Shown here one piece after another: positions 6,389 through 17,118 of a DNA stretch of 64,000 nt. The first letter of the stretch is position 1. Each line of letters begins with the position of its first letter. Source of the DNA: Guillardia theta CCMP2712 (lineage: Eukaryota; Protista; Cryptophyta); NCBI RefSeq assembly GCF_000315625.1, contig NW_005434654.1, positions 4,273 to 68,272 of the forward strand, in the 5' to 3' direction. The translations under genes and the position numbers were made by a program. Below the pieces are notes generated by a model that was not told where the DNA came from, did not search any database, and saw only the letters and a program-made list of their open reading frames with translations.

Positions 6389-8731
6389 TCTCCTTCTCCT
6401 CCTCCACCTGCCCCTGCTTGTGCTCCTGTGGCGTGCTGACGGTGGTGGGCAGGTGACATCATCATGGTGGTGGAATCGGACAAGGCAGACATGGACGTTG
6501 AGGCGTTTGAGGAGGGATACTTGGCCAAGATTCTCGTTTCTGATGGACAGTCAGCAGCCGTTGGCTCCCCTGTTGCCATCATCGTCCAGGACAAGTGCGT
6601 TCTAGGCTCTTGATGTCTCCTCCTCCTCTTCCTCCTCCTCCTACTTTTGGTAATATTTTCTTGCTTACTGTATTTTTTAGGTCGGATATCGACAAGGTTG
6701 TCATGCCAGGCGCTGCTCCCGCTGCTGCTCCTGCCGCTGCCCCAGCTGCTGCCCCAGCTGCTGCTGCCCCCGCCTCAGGCGTCCCCACTACTCCCATCTT
6801 CATGCCCGCCCTCTCCTCCACCATGAAGGAGGGAAAGATCGTCCAGTGGACCAAGGGAGAGGGCGACAAGGTCGAAGCCGGTGGGACTTCTTGCCTCCTC
6901 CTGCTGCTGCTCCTCCTCCTCCTCCTCCTGCTTGTGCTCCTGTGGCGTGCTGACGGTGGTGGGCAGGTGACATCATCATGGTGGTGGAGTCGGACAAGGC
7001 AGACATGGACGTTGAGTCTTTTGATGAGGGGTGAGATCATGAAAGCTCCTACTTTCCTCCTGTTAGCTCCTACCATCTTCCTCGTTCTCTTCCTCTTCCT
7101 CTTCCTCCTCCTCCTCTTCTTCTTCCTCCTTCTCCTTCTCCTCCTCTTCTTCCTCCACCTCCACCTCCACTTCTATACTCCCTCTCTCCCCCTTCACCTT
7201 CTTTCCTCTCTCCACTTCTTGTCTCCTCTAAACTTGAATGTTCCAGCTACATCGCAAAGATTCTTGTCCAGGACGGAACCTCCGCCACTGTGGGATCTAC
7301 CGTTGCTCTCCTTGTCGCTAACAAGTAAGTCGGAGGAGCAAGGTGTTTTCAAGTCTCACCCTCTTCCTGCAGGGACGACATCGGCAAGGTCTCTGCTGCT
7401 GACGCTCCCGCTGCCAGCGCTCCAGCTGCCCCTGCCGCGGCTGCTGCCCCAGCTGCTGCTCCAGCTGCTGCTGCAGTTCCCGTCGCCGCACCTGCTCCTG
7501 CTGCTGCTGCCAGGTGCTGTCTCCAGTGCTTCATGCTCTATGCTTGCTGACTGCTTTGTCAAGCAGAGCTGCTGGAGATCGTGTCGTTGCCTCCCCACTT
7601 GCTAAGGTGAGCCAATCCTCCTCCTCCTCCTCCTCCTTATCCTCCTTATTCCCCCCCTCCTCCTTTAGCTTCTGACACTCTGGCCAGTCTCTTGCGGCTG
7701 AGCGCGGCATCAACCTCGCCGACATCGTGGGCACAGGACCCGGAGGACGCATCACGTCCATGGACGTTGAGAACTTCAAGGGAGGATCCAAGAAGAAGGA
7801 GGACAAGGCCAGCGCTCCCAGCGGCCCCACCATCGACAGGACAGGAGGAGGAGTCATTCCTCCAGGCGCCATCATCGCCAGCCCGCAAGCCAAGAAGGCA
7901 GCCAAGCAGAGCGGTTTCGACCTCAAGAAGCTCGCGGGTAAGGGCACCGGCCCCTTCGGTCGCATCACCGAGGAGGACGTCCTGCTCGCGGCCGGCAAGG
8001 CCCCAGCTGCCCCTCCTGCTGCTCCTGTCAAGTCCTCCCGCAAGGTCCCTGAGCTCCCCGACGGGCCTGTCGCCATGACGGGCATGCAAGTAGCGGTGGC
8101 GAACAACATGGACGCTACTCTCAACGTCCCCATCTTCCGCGTGTCGAGGAGCATCACGACCGACAAGTTCGACGAGCTCTACGCGGCCCTCAAGCCCAAG
8201 GGCGTCACCGTCTCTGCCCTCCTCTCCCTCGCCGTCGCCCGCGTGCTCGAGAAGCATCCCATCATGAACGCGCGCTACGACGCCGCGAGCAAGTCCATCG
8301 TCTACCGCAAGGACATCAACATCGCCAACGCCGTCGCCATCGACGGAGGGCTCATCACCCCCGTGCTCAAGAACGCCAACATGATGGACATCGAGACGCT
8401 GAGCGGGCAGTGGAAGGAGCTGGTGGGCAAGGCCAAGTCAGGCAAGCTGAGACCCGACGAGTTCCAGTCCGGCACCTTCACCATCTCCAACCTCGGCATG
8501 TTCGGCGTGAGCCAGTTTGGCGCCATCCTTCCTCCGGGCCAGGGAACCATCCTTGCTGTCGGAGGAGCGAAGGAGGTTGTGGTGATGAAGAATGGCGCGC
8601 CGAGCAGCGTCAAGCAGATGGAGGTGACAGTCACGTGCGATCATCGGCACATCTACGGAGCCGACGCTGCTCTCTTCCTCAAGAGCCTCGCGGAGATGCT
8701 CGAAGAGCACCCGCTCGACATCATCCTGTAA
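6036..8731 (+). CDS. Plastid pyruvate dehydrogenase E2 (dihydrolipoamide acetyltransferase): 2 lipoyl, 2 peripheral subunit-binding and 1 catalytic domain; multi-exon
   Basis: Leader MHKAAALLLVACAASANAF (signal peptide + AxAF); MPALSSTMKEG and VESDKADMDVE twice; GTGPGGRIT and GTGPFGRIT; GTFTISNLGMFG; catalytic DHR motif. Confidence 0.95.
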
Positions 8732-9085: not shown

Positions 9086-10684
9086 CTACTTGGTGGCCTC
9101 CTTGACAAGGTCCTTCTTGAGCAGCCCCATGAACTTGGACTTCTCGTCGGCAGTCTGGAAGCGACCGTGACCGAACTTGGAGGAGGTGTCGATGAACTTG
9201 AGCGAGATCTCCTCGAGAGCGTTACGGGAGGTCTGAGCAAGGAGACTCTTGCGCATGGTGATGACACGCTTCTTGGTTCCCATGCAGCAGCCCTTGATCA
9301 TGACAAAGTCCTCCATGACCGCACCATAGTGGGGGAACCCTCCCATGGGGGTGATGGACTTCTCGGTGAGATCGAACTCGGTGGTGGCGTTCTTGTGCTC
9401 GATGGATCCGTCGGCCTTGCGCGCGGCCTCGCCGATGCGGTAGATCTTCTTGTTGAGCTCGGTACGGTGGAAGTAACCCTTCTGACCAGCACGGGCAACG
9501 GACCATCCGACAGCGGAAGGATGCCAAGAGCCGACGCAACCAACCTTGCGGAGACCTCTGTGGGTCTTGCGGGGGAGCTTGGTAACATGCCAGCGGGAGA
9601 CAACACCCTTGTAACCGTGACCCTTGGTGACACCGATGACGTCGATCATCTCGTTTTGAGAGAACACCGACTTGACAGGGACCTGCTGCTCAAAGAGCTT
9701 GGTAGCAAAGTCGACCTTGTCCTTGGTGGTTCCTCCGTTGACCTGGATCTCCATGACGTGCGCCTTCTTCTGGCCGATGTTGACCTTGGAGAGCTGGGTG
9801 TGGGCGATGACGCGGACGACCTGGCAGTACTTCTTGATGCGCTCGATCTCCTTGTCGGAGTTCTTGGAGCGCTCAGACTCTTCCTTGGTGTACTTGGTGA
9901 AGGCCTTCTTGGACTTGGACTTGTACCAGTTCTTGTACATCCTCCTGCGGAACTCGTCGGAAAGATGCTTGGCCCACACGGTGGTGAGGGAGCGGAGGCC
10001 ACGAGGGGTCTTGACGTAGCCGACGATGCCGACGACGACGATGGGAGGGGCCTCGAGGATGGTGACGGCCTCCACAGACTCCTTCTTGTGCTGCTTTGAG
10101 CCAGGCTTGTCGACGTCACGAACGATGTGGGTCATGCCGGCCTTGTAGCCCATGAAGGCGGTAAGGTGGCAGGGCTTGGAAGCATCATCGCGAGGGAACT
10201 TCCTGACCCTTCCCCTGTGGTGGGCGCACCTCTTGCGAGGGCAGAACCCAAGGGAACCGTGACGGGGGCGCTCTGTAGAGCATGGTCAGTGCCTTGCTGC
10301 AGCATGCGGCTCTAAACAAAAATGCATACAATTGCTCGGTCAACACATCCAACTTCAAAAACCACTAAATCTATCCATGCGCACCCCTTCCCAGACTTGC
10401 AAACATTATGAGAAGCGGCCTTCCAGCAGATCTCACATGATGCATCGATCACTGCTCATAGCTTCTATCATGCGACCACTCCCTACCTCCCTCAGTCCTG
10501 CCCCCTCACATCTCGTGCATCAGCAGGATGCACTTTCAGATGGATTATGAAAGCTTCTTCCTCTCTCCTGAACTCTCCTTGCCCTCTTCAGCGTCCTCCT
10601 CCTCCATCAACATCAACAGCTCTCCTCCACCACCATCGCCATGGCCTCCCCTCGTCTTCTCTTACCGAACTTGCGATGCGACAT
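9086..10684 (-). CDS. RPL3: 60S ribosomal protein L3 (exon 1 10684-10666, exon 2 10272-9086)
   Basis: MSHRKF|[49 protein letters not shown]. Confidence 0.98.
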
Positions 10685-11135
10685 GGCTGGCGCTGCACGA
10701 GGTCTGCACGAGCTTTCTTTCTTTTCTAGCCCCTTTTTTTTTCAACCGTTATCATTTTTCAACCGTTACAAAAAACTTCAAGATCTCCCGGCCTTTTTTA
10801 GTCACCCTCCGGGCTTCAAGCCACCCGGGGCCTGATCGGCCTTCCGGGCCCGATCGGCGGCAGGTGCCCAGGCTATCTGCGTTAAAAACCTGGGTCGTCC
10901 CACAGTAGTACCATTTTTACTGCAAGCCTCAATACCAGTACTAAATTATTGTGCCATAAATACAGCAACGCACTTAATCTGGTACTATGAGCTGAAGTTT
11001 CATACTTTGATCTGTGAAGTAAATATGGTAGTCTTTCATGAATCGCTTCTTATCTGTATAGCGAGAGATACTACATTAACTATTGCTTTTATAGAATACA
11101 GCTCTTTTTAAAATAAGTTTTATCTGGTGCTATGA

Positions 11136-13732
11136 AATTGAACCAACCCTATGGCGCGCGCAACCGTGGATGCCCTAGCATTTAAATCCTTCTTGAGGAG
11201 TTGAGTCATTATTACTACCACACATCAACCCCAACTTTGTACTTGACCCCACCATCTTCACTCAATATTCTGGTACACATTTGTACCAATCCTTCAATCT
11301 AAAACTATTTTAAAACAACAGCTCCGTGGAAAATGGCTAAGTCCTTTGCCAGGAGACAAGCATCCCTTGAGTCAGAGAGTAGCCTGTATCTTTCATCTAC
11401 CCAGCGAAGCAGTTCCAACAAAGAGATCGAGTAGAAACATCGAAGTGCCAAGTACAAAGCAGCCTGAATTTGCCTGAATTTGCTACTCGCACACTGAATT
11501 TGCTACTCGCACACTGGCAGGTAAGAACTCTTCCCTGTAGTTGTCCTGGGTCAAAGCTCTGCTGTTCTTCCCAAAAGAATATTTCGTCGATTGAGTCAGT
11601 TATATTCTGTTTCAAGCATAACTGATCTTTACACCGCACCATGTGGGAGACGTCAAGAAGCAACATTAAATGTTGCTTCTTGATGCACATTTTCATGTCC
11701 AGTTGTAATGATGTTACTAGGCGTTTCTAGGCTAACGTACTTGATTGCGAAGGATTCGAAGTTGCGATGACCCCTTCCAGTGGGTTCACCTGTTCTTCAT
11801 TCATTCTTTCCTCATGTGTCCTTCGCAAAGCTTCTCCACTTCGTTCATCGTGGATACGATCACTGATCATGAGCATTTCATCAGTTTGACCAGTATAACA
11901 TTTATCTCATTCATCTCACCTGCTGTCAATGTCGTTTGCCTCTGCAGGTGGCCGCCGTATATACTTGTAAACTGTAATGTACGACAAGCTTTCATACTTC
12001 TTCTTCTCGTTTTCCTTCTTCCATGAATCATCCCCATAAATTTTTTCTATAAGCTTTTTGTATGCTGTGTCAAAACAATTTTGGTAATTCTCTACAGTGA
12101 CTTTCTCCTGTCCCTCTAGTCCGCCTTTATCTCTTGCCATGTGCTCAAGCTTCTCCATAACTTTCCGTGCCTTGCAAAAGTTTTGCCGCATCCTTTTCTT
12201 GCGGATAAATTCCGGTTTCAACTTCTTCAAAGGGCATATCTTTTTTGCTATTCCATTCTCAACAAATTGTTCCCCACAGTGCCAACGTTGACACAGGTTC
12301 TTACAGTCTACCTTCTGCACAAAATCGTAATTTTGAGGAACCATACAGATTTCACCTGTGTCCCACTTGAACAAATCCCCTTGTATTGATGAGTCCGTGC
12401 CAACACCCCAGGTCATGTCATGCCCACTGCCGCCGCCACCTGACGACTCCGAGGTCATGCCTGCCGATCTGTCACATCCACCCGTACTTCGCCTGTACTG
12501 GAACATTTGTTCAATGCGTCGAGACAATTCTTGAATAGACTCGTTCAGTCGTTGCTCCAATTCCTTTATATCATCTCTCTGTACAGGTACAACACCATTG
12601 ATTTCGATTTTCTTTAGGATTGTTTCTGTCACAGCTTCAGGTATCTTCGTTATTCCAACCTTCAACTCTTCTCGCAGCATGTTGATTTCTTCCCTTTTTG
12701 CATACTTCCAAGTGTCCTTGCACTGTCAACAAATTCTTGCCTTCTTTTATACGCATCTCTCCATTGACTTTTTTCTCAGTGACATGTTTCGCATATGCTT
12801 GGATGATTTTATCCAAGTTCTGGTCTAAAGTCATCCCAGTCATTTCCTTTTACCCCTATCGCTGTGAATTCCTGATTGTGCTCGAAATAAAAGTCCTTCA
12901 ATGCGCACTTTTATCCTTGTAATGCGCCAACAGACAACGTCTGATGTTTGACATTGTTGGCAGTGGAGCTCGATGCTTCCTCTACCATGTGCTCACCGTC
13001 ATCGGAGTCACTCTCGTCGCTACTGTCGTCATCGGCGTCTATGTCGCCATGTTGCCCTCGCCTCCTCTTCCTTCTCTTTGTCAAACCGGTACTTCTTGTC
13101 AAATAGCCGAACAATCCCTTAACTGCCATCCATGAAAGTGGTAAATTCAATTGTCCAGACTCATTCAAAGCGTTTAAGTATATTTCATACTCGTTGGACT
13201 CGCCTGCTCTTTGAGCTCTTTGAGCGCGCTTCGCTTTCTTTCGGAGGATATCGACGAGTTTTAGAATTTTGTAACGATATACCTTCTGAGTGCTCTCAGC
13301 GATTCGTTTGTTCCTCATCGCATCATACGCATGTATATCTCGGTCTGTTCTGTTAGTAGACACATCCCTCGTGAAAGAGGCTACACTACTTGCATTGTCC
13401 GCTGTCTCTGTCCCCAGACGCAATCCATTTTCGGTCAGTGGGGTGGTTTTACGTTCAACTGTTCGCATACACCAACAATACTTTACTTAACTTTTTCCTG
13501 GTACAAATTATTTCAGCGCAATCTTTGACGCACGTATCCTAGGAACGTCATGTTAGATAACTTGTATACTACCGGTCCTTGATTTTGCATGGAAAAGTAC
13601 CCCGTATATTATATACCTATATCGAGTTGCGTGCTCAATCACTACTTTTATGAATTTTATTACTGCGCGCAACCCTATAACCCTAAAAGGACAGCAACAG
13701 ATATATAGGGATTGCGCCATAAAAATTAATTG
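11136..13732 (-). mobile_element. Non-autonomous Crypton-like (tyrosine-recombinase) DNA transposon, copy 1
   Basis: AT-rich 2592-bp unit bounded by AATTG direct repeats with subterminal inverted TATGGCGC; encodes a disrupted CryptonS-like protein. Confidence 0.75.
11916..13468 (-). pseudogene. Disrupted CryptonS-like recombinase: N- and C-terminal parts kept, catalytic core apparently absent
   Basis: ESTQKVYRYKI..LNLPLS..LQG*KCALKDFY (stop), frameshift, AYAKHVTEKKVNGEMRIKEGKNLLTVQG, frameshift, ILKKIEINGVVPV..FKW..MVPQNYDF..ICPLKKL. Resembles oomycete/diatom CryptonS proteins from recall. Confidence 0.65.
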
Positions 13733-16324
13733 AACCAACCCTATGGCGCGCGCAACCGTGGATGCCCTAGCATTTAAATCCTTCTTGAGGAGTTGAGTCA
13801 TTATTACTACCACACATCAACCCCAACTTTGTACTTGACCCCACCATCTTCACTCAATATTCTGGTACACATTTGTACCAATCCTTCAATCTAAAACTAT
13901 TTTAAAACAACAGCTCCGTGGAAAATGGCTAAGTCCTTTGCCAGGAGACAAGCATCCCTTGAGTCAGAGAGTAGCCTGTATCTTTCATCTACCCAGCGAA
14001 GCAGTTCCAACAAAGAGATCGAGTAGAAACATCGAAGTGCCAAGTACAAAGCAGCCTGAATTTGCCTGAATTTGCTACTCGCACACTGAATTTGCTACTC
14101 GCACACTGGCAGGTAAGAACTCTTCCCTGTAGTTGTCCTGGGTCAAAGCTCTGCTGTTCTTCCCAAAAGAATATTTCGTCGATTGAGTCAGTTATATTCT
14201 GTTTCAAGCATAACTGATCTTTACACCGCACCATGTGGGAGACGTCAAGAAGCAACATTAAATGTTGCTTCTTGATGCACATTTTCATGTCCAGTTGTAA
14301 TGATGTTACTAGGCGTTTCTAGGCTAACGTACTTGATTGCGAAGGATTCGAAGTTGCGATGACCCCTTCCAGTGGGTTCACCTGTTCTTCATTCATTCTT
14401 TCCTCATGTGTCCTTCGCAAAGCTTCTCCACTTCGTTCATCGTGGATACGATCACTGATCATGAGCATTTCATCAGTTTGACCAGTATAACATTTATCTC
14501 ATTCATCTCACCTGCTGTCAATGTCGTTTGCCTCTGCAGGTGGCCGCCGTATATACTTGTAAACTGTAATGTACGACAAGCTTTCATACTTCTTCTTCTC
14601 GTTTTCCTTCTTCCATGAATCATCCCCATAAATTTTTTCTATAAGCTTTTTGTATGCTGTGTCAAAACAATTTTGGTAATTCTCTACAGTGACTTTCTCC
14701 TGTCCCTCTAGTCCGCCTTTATCTCTTGCCATGTGCTCAAGCTTCTCCATAACTTTCCGTGCCTTGCAAAAGTTTTGCCGCATCCTTTTCTTGCGGATAA
14801 ATTCCGGTTTCAACTTCTTCAAAGGGCATATCTTTTTTGCTATTCCATTCTCAACAAATTGTTCCCCACAGTGCCAACGTTGACACAGGTTCTTACAGTC
14901 TACCTTCTGCACAAAATCGTAATTTTGAGGAACCATACAGATTTCACCTGTGTCCCACTTGAACAAATCCCCTTGTATTGATGAGTCCGTGCCAACACCC
15001 CAGGTCATGTCATGCCCACTGCCGCCGCCACCTGACGACTCCGAGGTCATGCCTGCCGATCTGTCACATCCACCCGTACTTCGCCTGTACTGGAACATTT
15101 GTTCAATGCGTCGAGACAATTCTTGAATAGACTCGTTCAGTCGTTGCTCCAATTCCTTTATATCATCTCTCTGTACAGGTACAACACCATTGATTTCGAT
15201 TTTCTTTAGGATTGTTTCTGTCACAGCTTCAGGTATCTTCGTTATTCCAACCTTCAACTCTTCTCGCAGCATGTTGATTTCTTCCCTTTTTGCATACTTC
15301 CAAGTGTCCTTGCACTGTCAACAAATTCTTGCCTTCTTTTATACGCATCTCTCCATTGACTTTTTTCTCAGTGACATGTTTCGCATATGCTTGGATGATT
15401 TTATCCAAGTTCTGGTCTAAAGTCATCCCAGTCATTTCCTTTTACCCCTATCGCTGTGAATTCCTGATTGTGCTCGAAATAAAAGTCCTTCAATGCGCAC
15501 TTTTATCCTTGTAATGCGCCAACAGACAACGTCTGATGTTTGACATTGTTGGCAGTGGAGCTCGATGCTTCCTCTACCATGTGCTCACCGTCATCGGAGT
15601 CACTCTCGTCGCTACTGTCGTCATCGGCGTCTATGTCGCCATGTTGCCCTCGCCTCCTCTTCCTTCTCTTTGTCAAACCGGTACTTCTTGTCAAATAGCC
15701 GAACAATCCCTTAACTGCCATCCATGAAAGTGGTAAATTCAATTGTCCAGACTCATTCAAAGCGTTTAAGTATATTTCATACTCGTTGGACTCGCCTGCT
15801 CTTTGAGCTCTTTGAGCGCGCTTCGCTTTCTTTCGGAGGATATCGACGAGTTTTAGAATTTTGTAACGATATACCTTCTGAGTGCTCTCAGCGATTCGTT
15901 TGTTCCTCATCGCATCATACGCATGTATATCTCGGTCTGTTCTGTTAGTAGACACATCCCTCGTGAAAGAGGCTACACTACTTGCATTGTCCGCTGTCTC
16001 TGTCCCCAGACGCAATCCATTTTCGGTCAGTGGGGTGGTTTTACGTTCAACTGTTCGCATACACCAACAATACTTTACTTAACTTTTTCCTGGTACAAAT
16101 TATTTCAGCGCAATCTTTGACGCACGTATCCTAGGAACGTCATGTTAGATAACTTGTATACTACCGGTCCTTGATTTTGCATGGAAAAGTACCCCGTATA
16201 TTATATACCTATATCGAGTTGCGTGCTCAATCACTACTTTTATGAATTTTATTACTGCGCGCAACCCTATAACCCTAAAAGGACAGCAACAGATATATAG
16301 GGATTGCGCCATAAAAATTAATTG
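13728..16324 (-). mobile_element. Crypton-like element, copy 2 (head-to-tail duplicate)
   Basis: All internal ORFs recur unchanged at an offset of exactly 2592; third AATTG at 16320-16324. Confidence 0.75.
14508..16060 (-). pseudogene. Disrupted CryptonS-like recombinase, second copy with the same lesions
   Basis: Same translations as 11916-13468. Confidence 0.65.
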
Positions 16325-17118
16325 TATTGTTTCTAGTATCGCTATGGCATTTCCTTGGACCACTCTGTATCTATGACCAGATGTTCTAGGACCTTCTTAT
16401 TAGGACCCCTAATTTTGATGGTCATAGGATAGATAGGATTAGTGTCCTAGGAACTTCATACTGTAATCACGACTCCTGTTTGTCTGCAGATGAGACTCCC
16501 TGTACATGCTGAACAGGGCGCACTAGGGCGGAGGATAGGCGGGGAGCGTGAAGAATGGCTGAGAGGAGGAGAATGGAAGGAGGGAGAGTAGAATAGACAG
16601 AGACAGAGAGGCAAGGCCTATCAACAATCATGTAGAGATGCAAGCTTGAAGATGCAGGTGTGCAGGCTTGACTGTTGGTAGGCAGAAAGGGTTCGAAGTG
16701 GTGAATGCAGTTAGAATTCTGAGTAGAGGAACAAATGTGCGAGGTAAGCATGTTGTTCGTTGGTGAAAATAAGAGAGAGACCCTGTGTTTACTCTGTTGA
16801 GGGGTTGGAAGCTGAGTATTCAGCCGTTAGGGCGTGATCAGTTGTAACGAATCATTTCATTCGATTCGTGAGTATCTTGGCTTGGTGGCACTAATCCTCT
16901 GATGGCGTGTGAAAGCTCAAGACAGTTTTTGCTGAATTTCCATCTCTCAAAGTTTTTTGGGGGGTTGAAGTACGAAATATTTGCTGAATATGGCACCCAG
17001 GCAGTGAGCGTTTACAAAACACTTGAATTCACGTCAATCTGTTTGTTCCGGTTCATTCTCGCTCAGTGGAATTCGGACATCTCGGTGACATCAAGCGTCA
17101 TCGCTTGGCTCTGCATCG

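What the first reader, a model, noticed from the sequence alone, without database searches (positions are those of the whole stretch)
11136..16324. Head-to-tail dimer of a Crypton-like tyrosine-recombinase transposon with three 5-bp crossover repeats
Seen: flank-AATTG(11136)-unit-AATTG(13728)-unit-AATTG(16320)-flank, with a period of exactly 2592 bp, identity ending exactly at the 5-mer, and no long TIRs. Established: Cryptons are tyrosine-recombinase DNA transposons bounded by short direct repeats and are thought to move through excised circles. Inference: a circle recombined into a resident copy's att site, or a dimeric circle integrated. I know CryptonS from oomycetes and diatoms, not from cryptophyte-type genomes, so this may be an undescribed and recently mobile family.
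Basis: partly seen in the sequence, partly recalled or inferred. Interest (0 to 1): 0.88.

Follow-up and report, generated by a model that had tools for sequence, protein, structure and literature searches.

The report
Tandem dimer of defective Crypton transposon
Two perfectly identical copies of a 2.6-kb defective 'Crypton' jumping gene sit head to tail in the alga Guillardia theta, at a spot that looks empty in a closely related strain, so this is a real and recently mobile element of a known but poorly understood transposon class.

Summary
Window 11136-13727 and 13728-16319 are 100% identical (2592 bp, 0 mismatches). AATTG occurs at 11136, 13728 and 16320, and identity stops exactly at the 5-mer. 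The genome is Guillardia theta CCMP2712.

The unit is mobile. At least six other copies or fragments (95-99%) lie elsewhere, and five of six other right ends stop at the same AATTG. One metagenome contig from a close relative joins the two flanks with a single AACTG, which is an empty site.

The minus strand carries a broken relic of a gene family found in G. theta, oomycetes and diatom-labelled clusters. That family's middle domain folds as a Flp/Cre-type tyrosine recombinase and keeps R-K-H-R-W-Y. Intact G. theta relatives are about 3.5 kb with 5-bp terminal direct repeats. This is Crypton-type, closest in layout to CryptonS.

The unit itself has lost about 320 codons, the whole catalytic domain, and has a stop and a frameshift. 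It is non-autonomous, and no master with the same ends is in the assembly.

One 108-nt contig from another run reads across the head-to-tail junction, so the junction is not an assembly invention. The number of units (two or more) and the existence of free circles remain open.

Verdict: a new member of a known kind, of moderate interest. The scan had already noted Crypton pieces in tandem arrays elsewhere in this genome.

The parts
11136..13727 (-). Unit 1 of the non-autonomous Crypton-type element (2592-bp period; the gene relic reads on the minus strand)
   Evidence: 100% identical to 13728-16319; other copies in the genome share its ends.
13728..16319 (-). Unit 2, identical to unit 1
   Evidence: 0 mismatches over 2592 bp.
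11136..11140 (+). Left AATTG core (junction of flank and element)
   Evidence: The only other assembled left end (C41) reads GATTG.
13728..13732 (+). Central AATTG core at the head-to-tail junction
   Evidence: contig record 4 of run X1 (13703-13810, no differences) reads across it.
16320..16324 (+). Right AATTG core (junction of element and flank)
   Evidence: five of six other right ends stop at the same AATTG.
12914..13468 (-). Relic ORF of 185 aa, the N-terminal SAM-like/core-binding part of the Crypton protein. It ends at an in-frame stop (12911-12913) inside the conserved GY-K-S-A-L motif. The same ORF lies in unit 2 at 15506-16060.
   Evidence: ORF; weak Phage_int_SAM_4, E 0.007; aligns to residues 15-161 of G. 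theta protein P0001.
12694..12846 (-). Frame-shifted piece with the E-G-K motif region (residues 161-210 of P0001). The deletion point lies at its 3' end, at 12694/12695.
   Evidence: residues 161-210 and 531-775 of P0001 abut at 12694/12695, and residues 211-530 (the catalytic domain) are missing.
11919..12680 (-). Intact 254-aa ORF holding the coiled-coil linker and the conserved C-terminal domain of the family. The same ORF lies in unit 2 at 14511-15272.
   Evidence: many paralogs; 44% identity to P0001 residues 531-775; nearest Atlas clusters are oomycete proteins, with GCR1_C-labelled clusters only as weak leads.
13712..13757 (.). Junction architecture. TTGCGCCATA (13712-13721) and its near mirror TATGGCGC..GCAA (13742-13757) flank the AATTG core 5 and 9 nt away. 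GCGCGCAACC also recurs as a direct repeat at 13665 and 13748. These are candidate recombinase-binding arms (inference).
   Evidence: Searches give the coordinates. Binding was not tested. The spacing is wider than in loxP or FRT-type sites.
11653..11683 (.). Internal 31-nt palindrome downstream of the 254-aa ORF (also at 14245-14275). It is not a terminal repeat.
   Evidence: pair I1.

Best explanation
The feature is a head-to-tail array of at least two units of a 2.6-kb non-autonomous Crypton-type DNA transposon of Guillardia theta. It is inserted in the intergenic region upstream of the ribosomal protein uL3 gene. Each unit is an internally deleted copy of a Crypton gene: the N-terminal core-binding part and the C-terminal domain remain, and the tyrosine-recombinase catalytic domain is gone. 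It must therefore be moved by a recombinase supplied in trans. Inferred mechanism, following the Goodwin model and the behaviour of the active Chlamydomonas Crypton: the recombinase pairs the element's AATTG core with a near-identical target (here AAYTG) and exchanges strands. The element is then bounded by the core on both sides with no other duplication. The dimer is the product of the same reaction acting on element ends instead of a fresh target. Three routes give the identical product: a monomer circle integrating into the core at one end of a resident copy, a dimeric circle integrating, or left-end by right-end exchange between sister chromatids. Shown: the perfect dimer, ends shared with other copies, the empty site, the junction in independent reads, the recombinase nature of the parent family, and the deletion. 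Inferred: the recombinase-driven origin of the dimer, the circles, and the source of the enzyme.
For: Dimer and 5-mers. Mobile unit with defined ends: searches find copies on C90, C5, C230, C41, C168 and C2 at 95-99%, and five of six other right ends stop at AATTG before unrelated flanks. Empty site: record 17 of run X6 (605 nt) joins 11137 to 16323 with one letter between, giving a single AACTG between the two flanks. Junction: record 4 of run X1 (13703-13810, 108 nt, no differences) starts exactly 25 nt before the core, as the flank contigs do at 16295. Parent family is a tyrosine recombinase. Paralogs keep R, K, HxxR, W and Y. In an alignment of 73 homologs these residues are invariant or nearly so. 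The AlphaFold model (pLDDT 92.8) has Flp, Cre, Ndc10, lambda Int and Xer as its top Foldseek hits. The nearest Atlas clusters carry NDC10_II/GCR1_C or Phage_integrase, or are oomycete and diatom proteins. Crypton-type layout of intact relatives: about 3.5 kb, a single gene, and a 5-bp terminal direct repeat TTCTA/TTCTA. Deletion. Literature: CryptonS elements are about 3 kb with 5-6-bp terminal direct repeats and have a known non-autonomous member (PMC3212892). The active CryptonF-1_cRei ends in CACCG, targets CAYCG, and excision leaves the target (PMC9977147). Related intact elements assemble as more than one unit head to tail in two independent metagenomes.
Against: No autonomous element with the same ends exists in the assembly. 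The closest full-length paralogs (C64, C76; 37-51% identity) have other ends and altered catalytic residues, so the enzyme source is unknown. All read evidence is from contigs, not raw reads. The junction contig has only 25 (30 with the core) letters on its left side, below the tool's 31-letter rule for bridging, and the kind of run X1 is not on record. The empty-site contig has depth 3.6, comes from a metagenome, and reads AACTG where both flanking cores read AATTG. One copy (C90) ends differently. Pfam, PDB sequence search and HMMs for GCR1_C and DUF3504 find nothing, so the Crypton assignment rests on motifs, fold and layout rather than a curated family model. Unit number cannot be fixed.
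Confidence: 0.7

Rival explanations
1. Assembly artefact in copy number. The locus holds one integrated unit, and the second unit was built by the assembler from reads of free circles or of other copies.
For: The two units are 100% identical, which is what a consensus built from pooled repeat reads would give. Junction reads would also come from circles. The family is under-represented in the assembly: about 8-10 copies by contig depth in run X3 against 5-7 assembled.
Against: Assemblers usually collapse perfect repeats rather than expand them. The junction sequence exists in reads of run X1. No gap or contig end lies near. Depth ratios point to more junctions than assembled, not fewer: in X1 the junction is at 12.9 against flanks at 2.8 and 4.6.
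Confidence: 0.12
2. Ordinary tandem duplication of a resident single copy by replication slippage or unequal crossover at 5-bp microhomology, with no recombinase involved.
For: Any duplication bounded by a short repeat gives the same layout. Earlier follow-ups of this scan judged two other Crypton-containing tandem arrays of this genome to be ordinary duplications. The C31 array is an older tandem duplication that includes non-element DNA.
Against: The duplication boundaries coincide to the base with the element's own ends, as defined independently by other copies and by the empty site. A random microhomology event would rarely pick exactly these 5 bp out of 2.6 kb plus flanks.
Confidence: 0.12
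3. A cut-and-paste (DDE-type) element with a 5-bp target-site duplication and strong preference for AATTG. The second copy inserted into the duplicated target of the first.
For: The 5-mer is present once in the empty site and on both sides of the insert, as for a target-site duplication. A site-specific element re-inserting at its own duplicated target would give the same three 5-mers.
Against: There are no terminal inverted repeats. No transposase-like coding was found; the only coding relic is of a tyrosine-recombinase gene family. The empty site reads AACTG while both flanking 5-mers read AATTG. The right-end 5-mer is constant across copies while the one other left-end 5-mer differs, which fits an element-borne core.
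Confidence: 0.03

Closest known systems
CryptonS elements of oomycetes and a diatom (Kojima and Jurka 2011, PMC3212892)
   Same: About 3-kb elements with a single tyrosine-recombinase gene. They have no Pfam GCR1_C domain but a conserved C-terminal region, and 5- or 6-bp terminal direct repeats without inverted repeats. A non-autonomous member is known (CryptonS-N1_PS). Homologs of the G. theta family occur in an oomycete (Lagenidium) and in Atlas clusters labelled oomycete and diatom.
   Different: The host is a cryptophyte. The terminal core is AATTG (TTCTA in the intact G. theta family), not the TATGG shared by most CryptonS. Placement inside the CryptonS clade was not tested. This unit lacks the recombinase domain and stands as a perfect tandem dimer, an arrangement that paper does not mention.
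CryptonF-1_cRei, the active Crypton of Chlamydomonas reinhardtii (PMC9977147)
   Same: The element ends in a 5-bp motif (CACCG) and inserts at a near-identical target (CAYCG). Excision leaves only the target. Insertions favour gene-proximal intergenic DNA. Here the element core is AATTG, the empty site reads AACTG, and the site lies between two genes.
   Different: CryptonF carries a GCR1_C domain that Pfam recognises. Here neither the proteins nor the whole genome match it. Activity here is inferred from polymorphism, not observed. No tandem dimers were reported there in the passages read.
Non-autonomous Cryptons (CryptonI-1N1_RPro, CryptonA-1N1/N2_OL; PMC3212892)
   Same: Internally deleted derivatives that keep the ends and outnumber their masters.
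   Different: Those derivatives share ends with an identified autonomous master. Here no master with the same ends is in the assembly.
Tandem integrated multimers made by other tyrosine recombinases (tandem lambda polylysogens, Flp-driven 2-micron multimers). This comparison is from my own knowledge and was not checked here.
   Same: Recombination between an incoming circle and the hybrid att site of a resident copy, or between copies, gives head-to-tail arrays separated by one core sequence.
   Different: Those are a phage and a plasmid with long, well-defined att or FRT sites, whereas this is a eukaryotic nuclear transposon with a 5-bp core.

Membership tests
Crypton (tyrosine-recombinase DNA transposons) | Encodes a tyrosine recombinase with the catalytic R-(K)-H-R-(H/W)-Y residues | tested here: not met
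   For the window's unit itself, residues 211-530 of the closest G. theta protein are deleted, which removes the whole catalytic domain. For the parent family the feature is met. Motifs are kept in paralogs. R124, K151, R242 and Y276 are invariant, and H239 and R264 nearly invariant, in 73 homologs. The top fold hits are Flp and Cre. The unit is therefore a non-autonomous derivative, not an autonomous Crypton.
Crypton (tyrosine-recombinase DNA transposons) | No reverse transcriptase, no long terminal or inverted repeats (this separates Cryptons from DIRS, Ngaro and PAT) | tested here: met
   No terminal inverted or long direct repeats within a unit. No Pfam domain other than a weak SAM-like hit. 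Intact relatives are about 3.5 kb, with room for the one gene only.
Crypton (tyrosine-recombinase DNA transposons) | Short (4-6 bp) direct repeat at both ends that matches a near-identical target present once in the empty site | tested here: met
   AATTG lies at both ends and at the junction and is shared by five of six other right ends. The empty-site contig has a single AACTG (one contig, depth 3.6). The intact C342 family has TTCTA at both ends.
Crypton (tyrosine-recombinase DNA transposons) | Moves through an excised circular intermediate | not testable with these tools
   A contig across the head-to-tail junction exists, but it fits a tandem array and a circle equally well. Raw or long reads and exonuclease-treated DNA are needed.
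CryptonS group | No GCR1_C domain but a conserved C-terminal region | tested here: met
   Pfam finds no GCR1_C in the unit's ORFs, paralogs or distant homologs, nor in the genome (although the control genomes also gave nothing). The C-terminal W-G/VP/W-W-G region is conserved across 73 homologs. Atlas features put GCR1_C-labelled clusters nearby, so a distant GCR1_C relationship is not excluded.
CryptonS group | Recombinase falls inside the CryptonS clade in a phylogeny with reference Cryptons | not tested
   No reference CryptonS protein sequences are available in these tools, since Repbase is not on hand. The only indirect support is oomycete and diatom homologs.
CryptonS group | TATGG termini (most members) | tested here: not met
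   The termini are AATTG here and TTCTA in the intact G. theta family. A TATGG lies 14 nt inside the left end, but it is not the boundary.
Non-autonomous derivative of an identified autonomous element | Shares terminal sequences with an autonomous master in the same genome | tested here: not met
   The DNA search of the genome returns only copies with the same deletion, or fragments. The ends do not match the C64 or C76 loci.

The most novel reading that the evidence does not exclude
Tandem end-to-end multimers are a working intermediate of Crypton multiplication, not an accident. Recombinase-driven exchange between the left core of one sister chromatid and the right core of the other makes a dimer (and an empty site). 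Later resolution of a dimer releases a circle while leaving a copy behind. That would explain how Cryptons both excise cleanly and rise in copy number, the puzzle noted for the active Chlamydomonas element. The depth figures fit this: there are about 3.5 junctions per flank in run X1, and 3-4 more unit copies in run X3 than in the assembly. These would then mean either a longer array (4-5 units) or free circles at this locus.
Probability: 0.2. Interest if true: 0.75.

Novelty: new member of a known kind. Interest (0 to 1): 0.45.

Why it matters
Cryptons are the least understood class of eukaryotic DNA transposons, and activity has been observed only once, in Chlamydomonas. This locus offers a clean natural product of the reaction: a defined 5-bp core, a matching empty site in a near relative, and an exact end-to-end dimer of a recombinase-less derivative. 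It extends the class to a cryptophyte. It shows that a non-autonomous Crypton can spread without a recognisable master in the assembly. It also gives a concrete, testable substrate (the AATTG junction with flanking mirror motifs) for asking how Crypton recombinases choose sites and how copy number rises. It is not a new kind of element.

Tried and rejected
- Pfam gave only a weak SAM-like hit (E 0.007) on the unit's ORFs. It gave nothing usable on full-length paralogs or distant homologs.
- A profile of 73 homologs against PDB sequences found no recombinase. Only the fold search did.
- HMM searches of the genome for GCR1_C and DUF3504 found nothing, but the controls were also silent, so these are weak negatives.
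- No autonomous master with the same ends was found. The 1.5 kb held upstream of the 31-nt solo right end on C89 has no Crypton coding.
- Exact-product look-ups of the junction-spanning ORF and of the 185-aa ORF in other assemblies found nothing. The 254-aa ORF was found only on a 2.1-kb JGI contig colinear with the unit.
- The search for homologous proteins returned unnamed metagenome proteins only and gave no taxonomy.
- Literature searches for Crypton with Guillardia or with head-to-tail gave nothing relevant.
- A test for selection on the relic ORFs was inconclusive. The 254-aa ORF is no better conserved than non-coding parts, and only the 185-aa ORF shows fewer changes.
All searches used the separate pieces by reference.
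Full report
**Observation**

Window 11136-13727 and 13728-16319 are each 2592 bp and differ at no position. Identity stops at once to the left of 11136. It runs exactly 5 bases, AATTG, beyond 16319 (junctions read).

- AATTG occurs at about 5e-4 per position in this window, so the third copy in register is not chance.
- Repeat search finds no terminal inverted repeats. The only long palindrome is internal, at 11653-11683.
- The window's N run is 40 kb away.

**Host and copies**

The assembly has 87.1 Mb in 669 contigs, and the window is C20:4273-68272. The best distant homolog of the family carries the name of a Guillardia theta CCMP2712 hypothetical protein, so the cryptophyte guess is right.

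A DNA search of the genome finds further copies at 95-99% identity on C90, C5, C230, C41 and C168. It also finds a 279-bp right-end fragment on C2 and a 31-nt right-end fragment on C89.

- Five of the six other right ends stop at the same AATTG and then run into unrelated DNA. C90 ends three bases earlier.
- The only other assembled left end (C41) begins GATTG.
- The unit is therefore a dispersed repeat whose ends coincide with the 5-mer. The right-hand 5-mer behaves as part of the element, and the left-hand one varies at its first base.

**Read evidence (contigs only, one call allowed)**

1. Run X6 is a freshwater metagenome that holds a near relative, with 3 differences and 1 indel in 238 nt of left flank. 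It has a 605-nt contig that joins 11137 to 16323 with one letter C between.
   - That is the empty site: left flank, a single AACTG, right flank.
   - The same run holds the element at other sites, shown by loose ends with other flanks at 11136 and 16324.
   - The contig has depth 3.6, so the C may be an error or a strain difference.
2. Run X1 (2011, kind not on record) has a 108-nt contig, 13703-13810, without any difference, that reads from the right end through the central AATTG into the left end.
   - It starts exactly 25 nt before the core. The flank contigs do the same at 16295 in X1 and X3, which is what a 31-mer graph gives at the first word unique to a junction.
   - By the tool's own 31-letter rule it is borderline, with 25 letters on the left, or 30 with the core.
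3. Run X3 shares the assembly's breakpoints, and its loose ends match the C41, C5, C168 and C7 copies.
   - Flanks lie at depth 57-68 and unit contigs at 450-640, which is roughly 8-10 copies against 5-7 assembled.
   - In X1 the junction contig (12.9) is about 3.5 times the flanks (2.8 and 4.6).
   - These figures fit a longer array, free circles or unassembled copies. They cannot be told apart here.
4. Run X7 is a guessed RNA run. It and a JGI contig hold a 2.1-kb piece colinear with the unit. The relic is probably transcribed and its frame breaks are not introns.

**Coding content**

The minus strand carries three pieces.

- A 185-aa ORF (12914-13468) aligns to residues 15-161 of the G. theta protein P0001. 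It ends at an in-frame stop inside a conserved motif.
- A frame-shifted piece (12694-12846) matches residues 161-210.
- Directly abutting it is a 254-aa ORF (11919-12680) matching residues 531-775.

Residues 211-530 are absent with no DNA in between. All copies that cover the point share this deletion. I searched the pieces separately and did not join them.

**The parent family**

Six-frame searches of the genome find dozens of paralogs.

- An 851-aa open frame on C76.
- A two-exon gene on C64.
- A multicopy family (C342, C43, C1, C4, C53) at 99.3-99.9% identity.

The alignment of paralogs shows the missing region to hold the motifs of a tyrosine recombinase. There is an Arg in a W-N-C-C-C-R-S box and a Lys in T-K-x-D-Q-G. 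There is also H-S-F-R-K-G and R-A-S-W-S-L-G-x-x-x-D-R-Y.

- The C342 family keeps all of these.
- C64 has Gln for the His.
- C76 has Leu, Ser and Cys at the Arg, His and Tyr positions.

A full HMMER scan of 1.84 billion representatives finds 2025 relatives, 1041 of them below 1e-10. One is from the oomycete Lagenidium.

- In 73 aligned homologs R124, K151, S240, R242, K243 and Y276 are invariant. H239, R264 and the LPPHF motif are nearly so.
- Pfam and PDB sequence searches see nothing.
- The AlphaFold model of the middle region is confident (pLDDT 92.8, pTM 0.90).
- Its best Foldseek matches are Flp, Cre/Tre, Ndc10, lambda integrase and Xer recombinases. Ndc10 is a yeast protein that Kojima and Jurka derive from CryptonF.
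- The nearest ESM Atlas clusters are fungal NDC10_II/GCR1_C proteins, then oomycete and diatom hypothetical proteins. The structure rows hit Phage_integrase.

**Layout of intact relatives**

The C342 family spans about 3.5 kb. Its C342 copy has TTCTA directly outside both ends, and its C43 copy has TTTTA and TTATA. This is the Crypton pattern:

- one recombinase gene;
- no reverse transcriptase;
- no inverted repeats;
- a 4-6-bp terminal direct repeat.

The literature read here matches.

- CryptonS elements are about 3 kb, lack GCR1_C but share a conserved C-terminal region, and have 5-6-bp terminal repeats, mostly TATGG. They include a non-autonomous member (PMC3212892).
- The active Chlamydomonas CryptonF ends in CACCG and targets CAYCG. 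Its excision leaves the target, yet copy number rises (PMC9977147).

**What it is**

The unit is a non-autonomous, internally deleted Crypton-type element, closest in layout to CryptonS, standing as an exact end-to-end dimer. It lies between the uL3 gene (exon at 9086-10153, minus strand) and a transcribed gene to the right. This is gene-proximal intergenic DNA, as for the Chlamydomonas element.

**How the dimer arose (inference)**

The duplication boundaries coincide to the base with the element's ends, which are defined independently by other copies and by the empty site. A transposition-type event is therefore far more likely than random microhomology. Three routes give the same product:

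- a monomer circle entering the core of a resident copy;
- integration of a dimeric circle;
- recombinase-driven exchange between the left core and the right core of sister chromatids.

The junction shows a near-mirror pair. TTGCGCCATA lies 5 nt left of the core and TATGGCGC..GCAA lies 9 nt right of it, and there is also a GCGCGCAACC direct repeat. A similar pair appears in the virtual junction of the C342 family. These are candidate binding arms only.

**Support from elsewhere**

An intact homolog (P0003) sits on two independent metagenome contigs that are longer than one unit.

- One contig holds a 2665-bp unit plus 852 identical bases of the next.
- The other holds an internally deleted unit, a full unit and 855 bases of a third.

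Head-to-tail concatemers or circles therefore recur in this family. Within G. theta, C31 holds an older 3.5-kb tandem array with degenerate Crypton coding and a Myb-type ORF. Earlier follow-ups of this scan judged two Crypton-containing arrays to be ordinary duplications.

**Open points**

- The enzyme source is unknown, since no master shares these ends.
- The number of units and the existence of circles are undecided.
- Placement among Crypton groups and prior deposition in Repbase were not testable.

**Verdict**

The feature is real. It is a new member of a known kind, with a mechanistically suggestive arrangement. Interest is moderate.

Noticed in passing
L077 (ENA ERZ1896579, 4640 nt) and L078 (ENA ERZ23488571, 3517 nt): An intact 761-aa homolog with all catalytic residues lies on metagenome contigs longer than its 2665-bp unit. 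L078 repeats its first 852 nt at the end. L077 holds an internally deleted unit (1120 bp), a full unit and part of a third, at coverage 86.7. These could be tandem arrays or small circular replicons of a Crypton-like family.
   Followed up: partly
G000 C31:173400-181200 (L026 1400-9230): About 2.2 tandem units of roughly 3.5 kb (95% identical). Each holds degenerate Crypton-like coding with frame breaks and an intact 189-244-aa SHAQKYF-type Myb ORF.
   Followed up: partly
G000 C342:10936-14413, with copies on C43, C1, C4 and C53 (L038-L040, L055-L058): An apparently autonomous, recently active Crypton family. It is about 3.5 kb with two exons, keeps all catalytic motifs, and its copies are 99.3-99.9% identical. 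It has a 5-bp terminal direct repeat (TTCTA/TTCTA, TTTTA/TTATA).
   Followed up: partly
G000 C76:97664-100216, minus strand (L035, L054): A single-copy, uninterrupted 851-aa open frame of the same family in which the catalytic Arg, His and Tyr positions read Leu, Ser and Cys. It may be a domesticated or dead Crypton gene. C64 (named GUITHDRAFT_113076) has Gln for the His.
   Followed up: no
G000 C89:342987-343017 (L018 1501-1531): A solo 31-nt copy of the element's right terminus ending in AATTG. Unrelated DNA lies on both sides, with no Crypton coding in the 1.5 kb upstream.
   Followed up: partly
window 12914-13468 compared with the copies on C90, C5 and C230: The 185-aa relic ORF has about 0.4% substitutions between copies, against about 2% in the non-coding parts and 1.25% in the 254-aa ORF. 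This could be selection, conversion or chance; the numbers are small.
   Followed up: partly
window 10900-16600, run X3: Contig depth of the unit is 8-10 times that of the flanks, while the assembly holds 5-7 copies of the same parts. About 3-4 near-identical units are missing from the assembly.
   Followed up: no
window 7727-8731 (+) and 9086-10153 (-): The neighbours on the left are an exon of a 2-oxoacid dehydrogenase E2 acyltransferase and an exon of ribosomal protein uL3. This is read from the translations only.
   Followed up: no
window 11474-11516 (and 14066-14108): A 23-nt motif repeated twice with 20-nt spacing lies inside the 3' non-coding part of each unit. Its function is unknown.
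   Followed up: no
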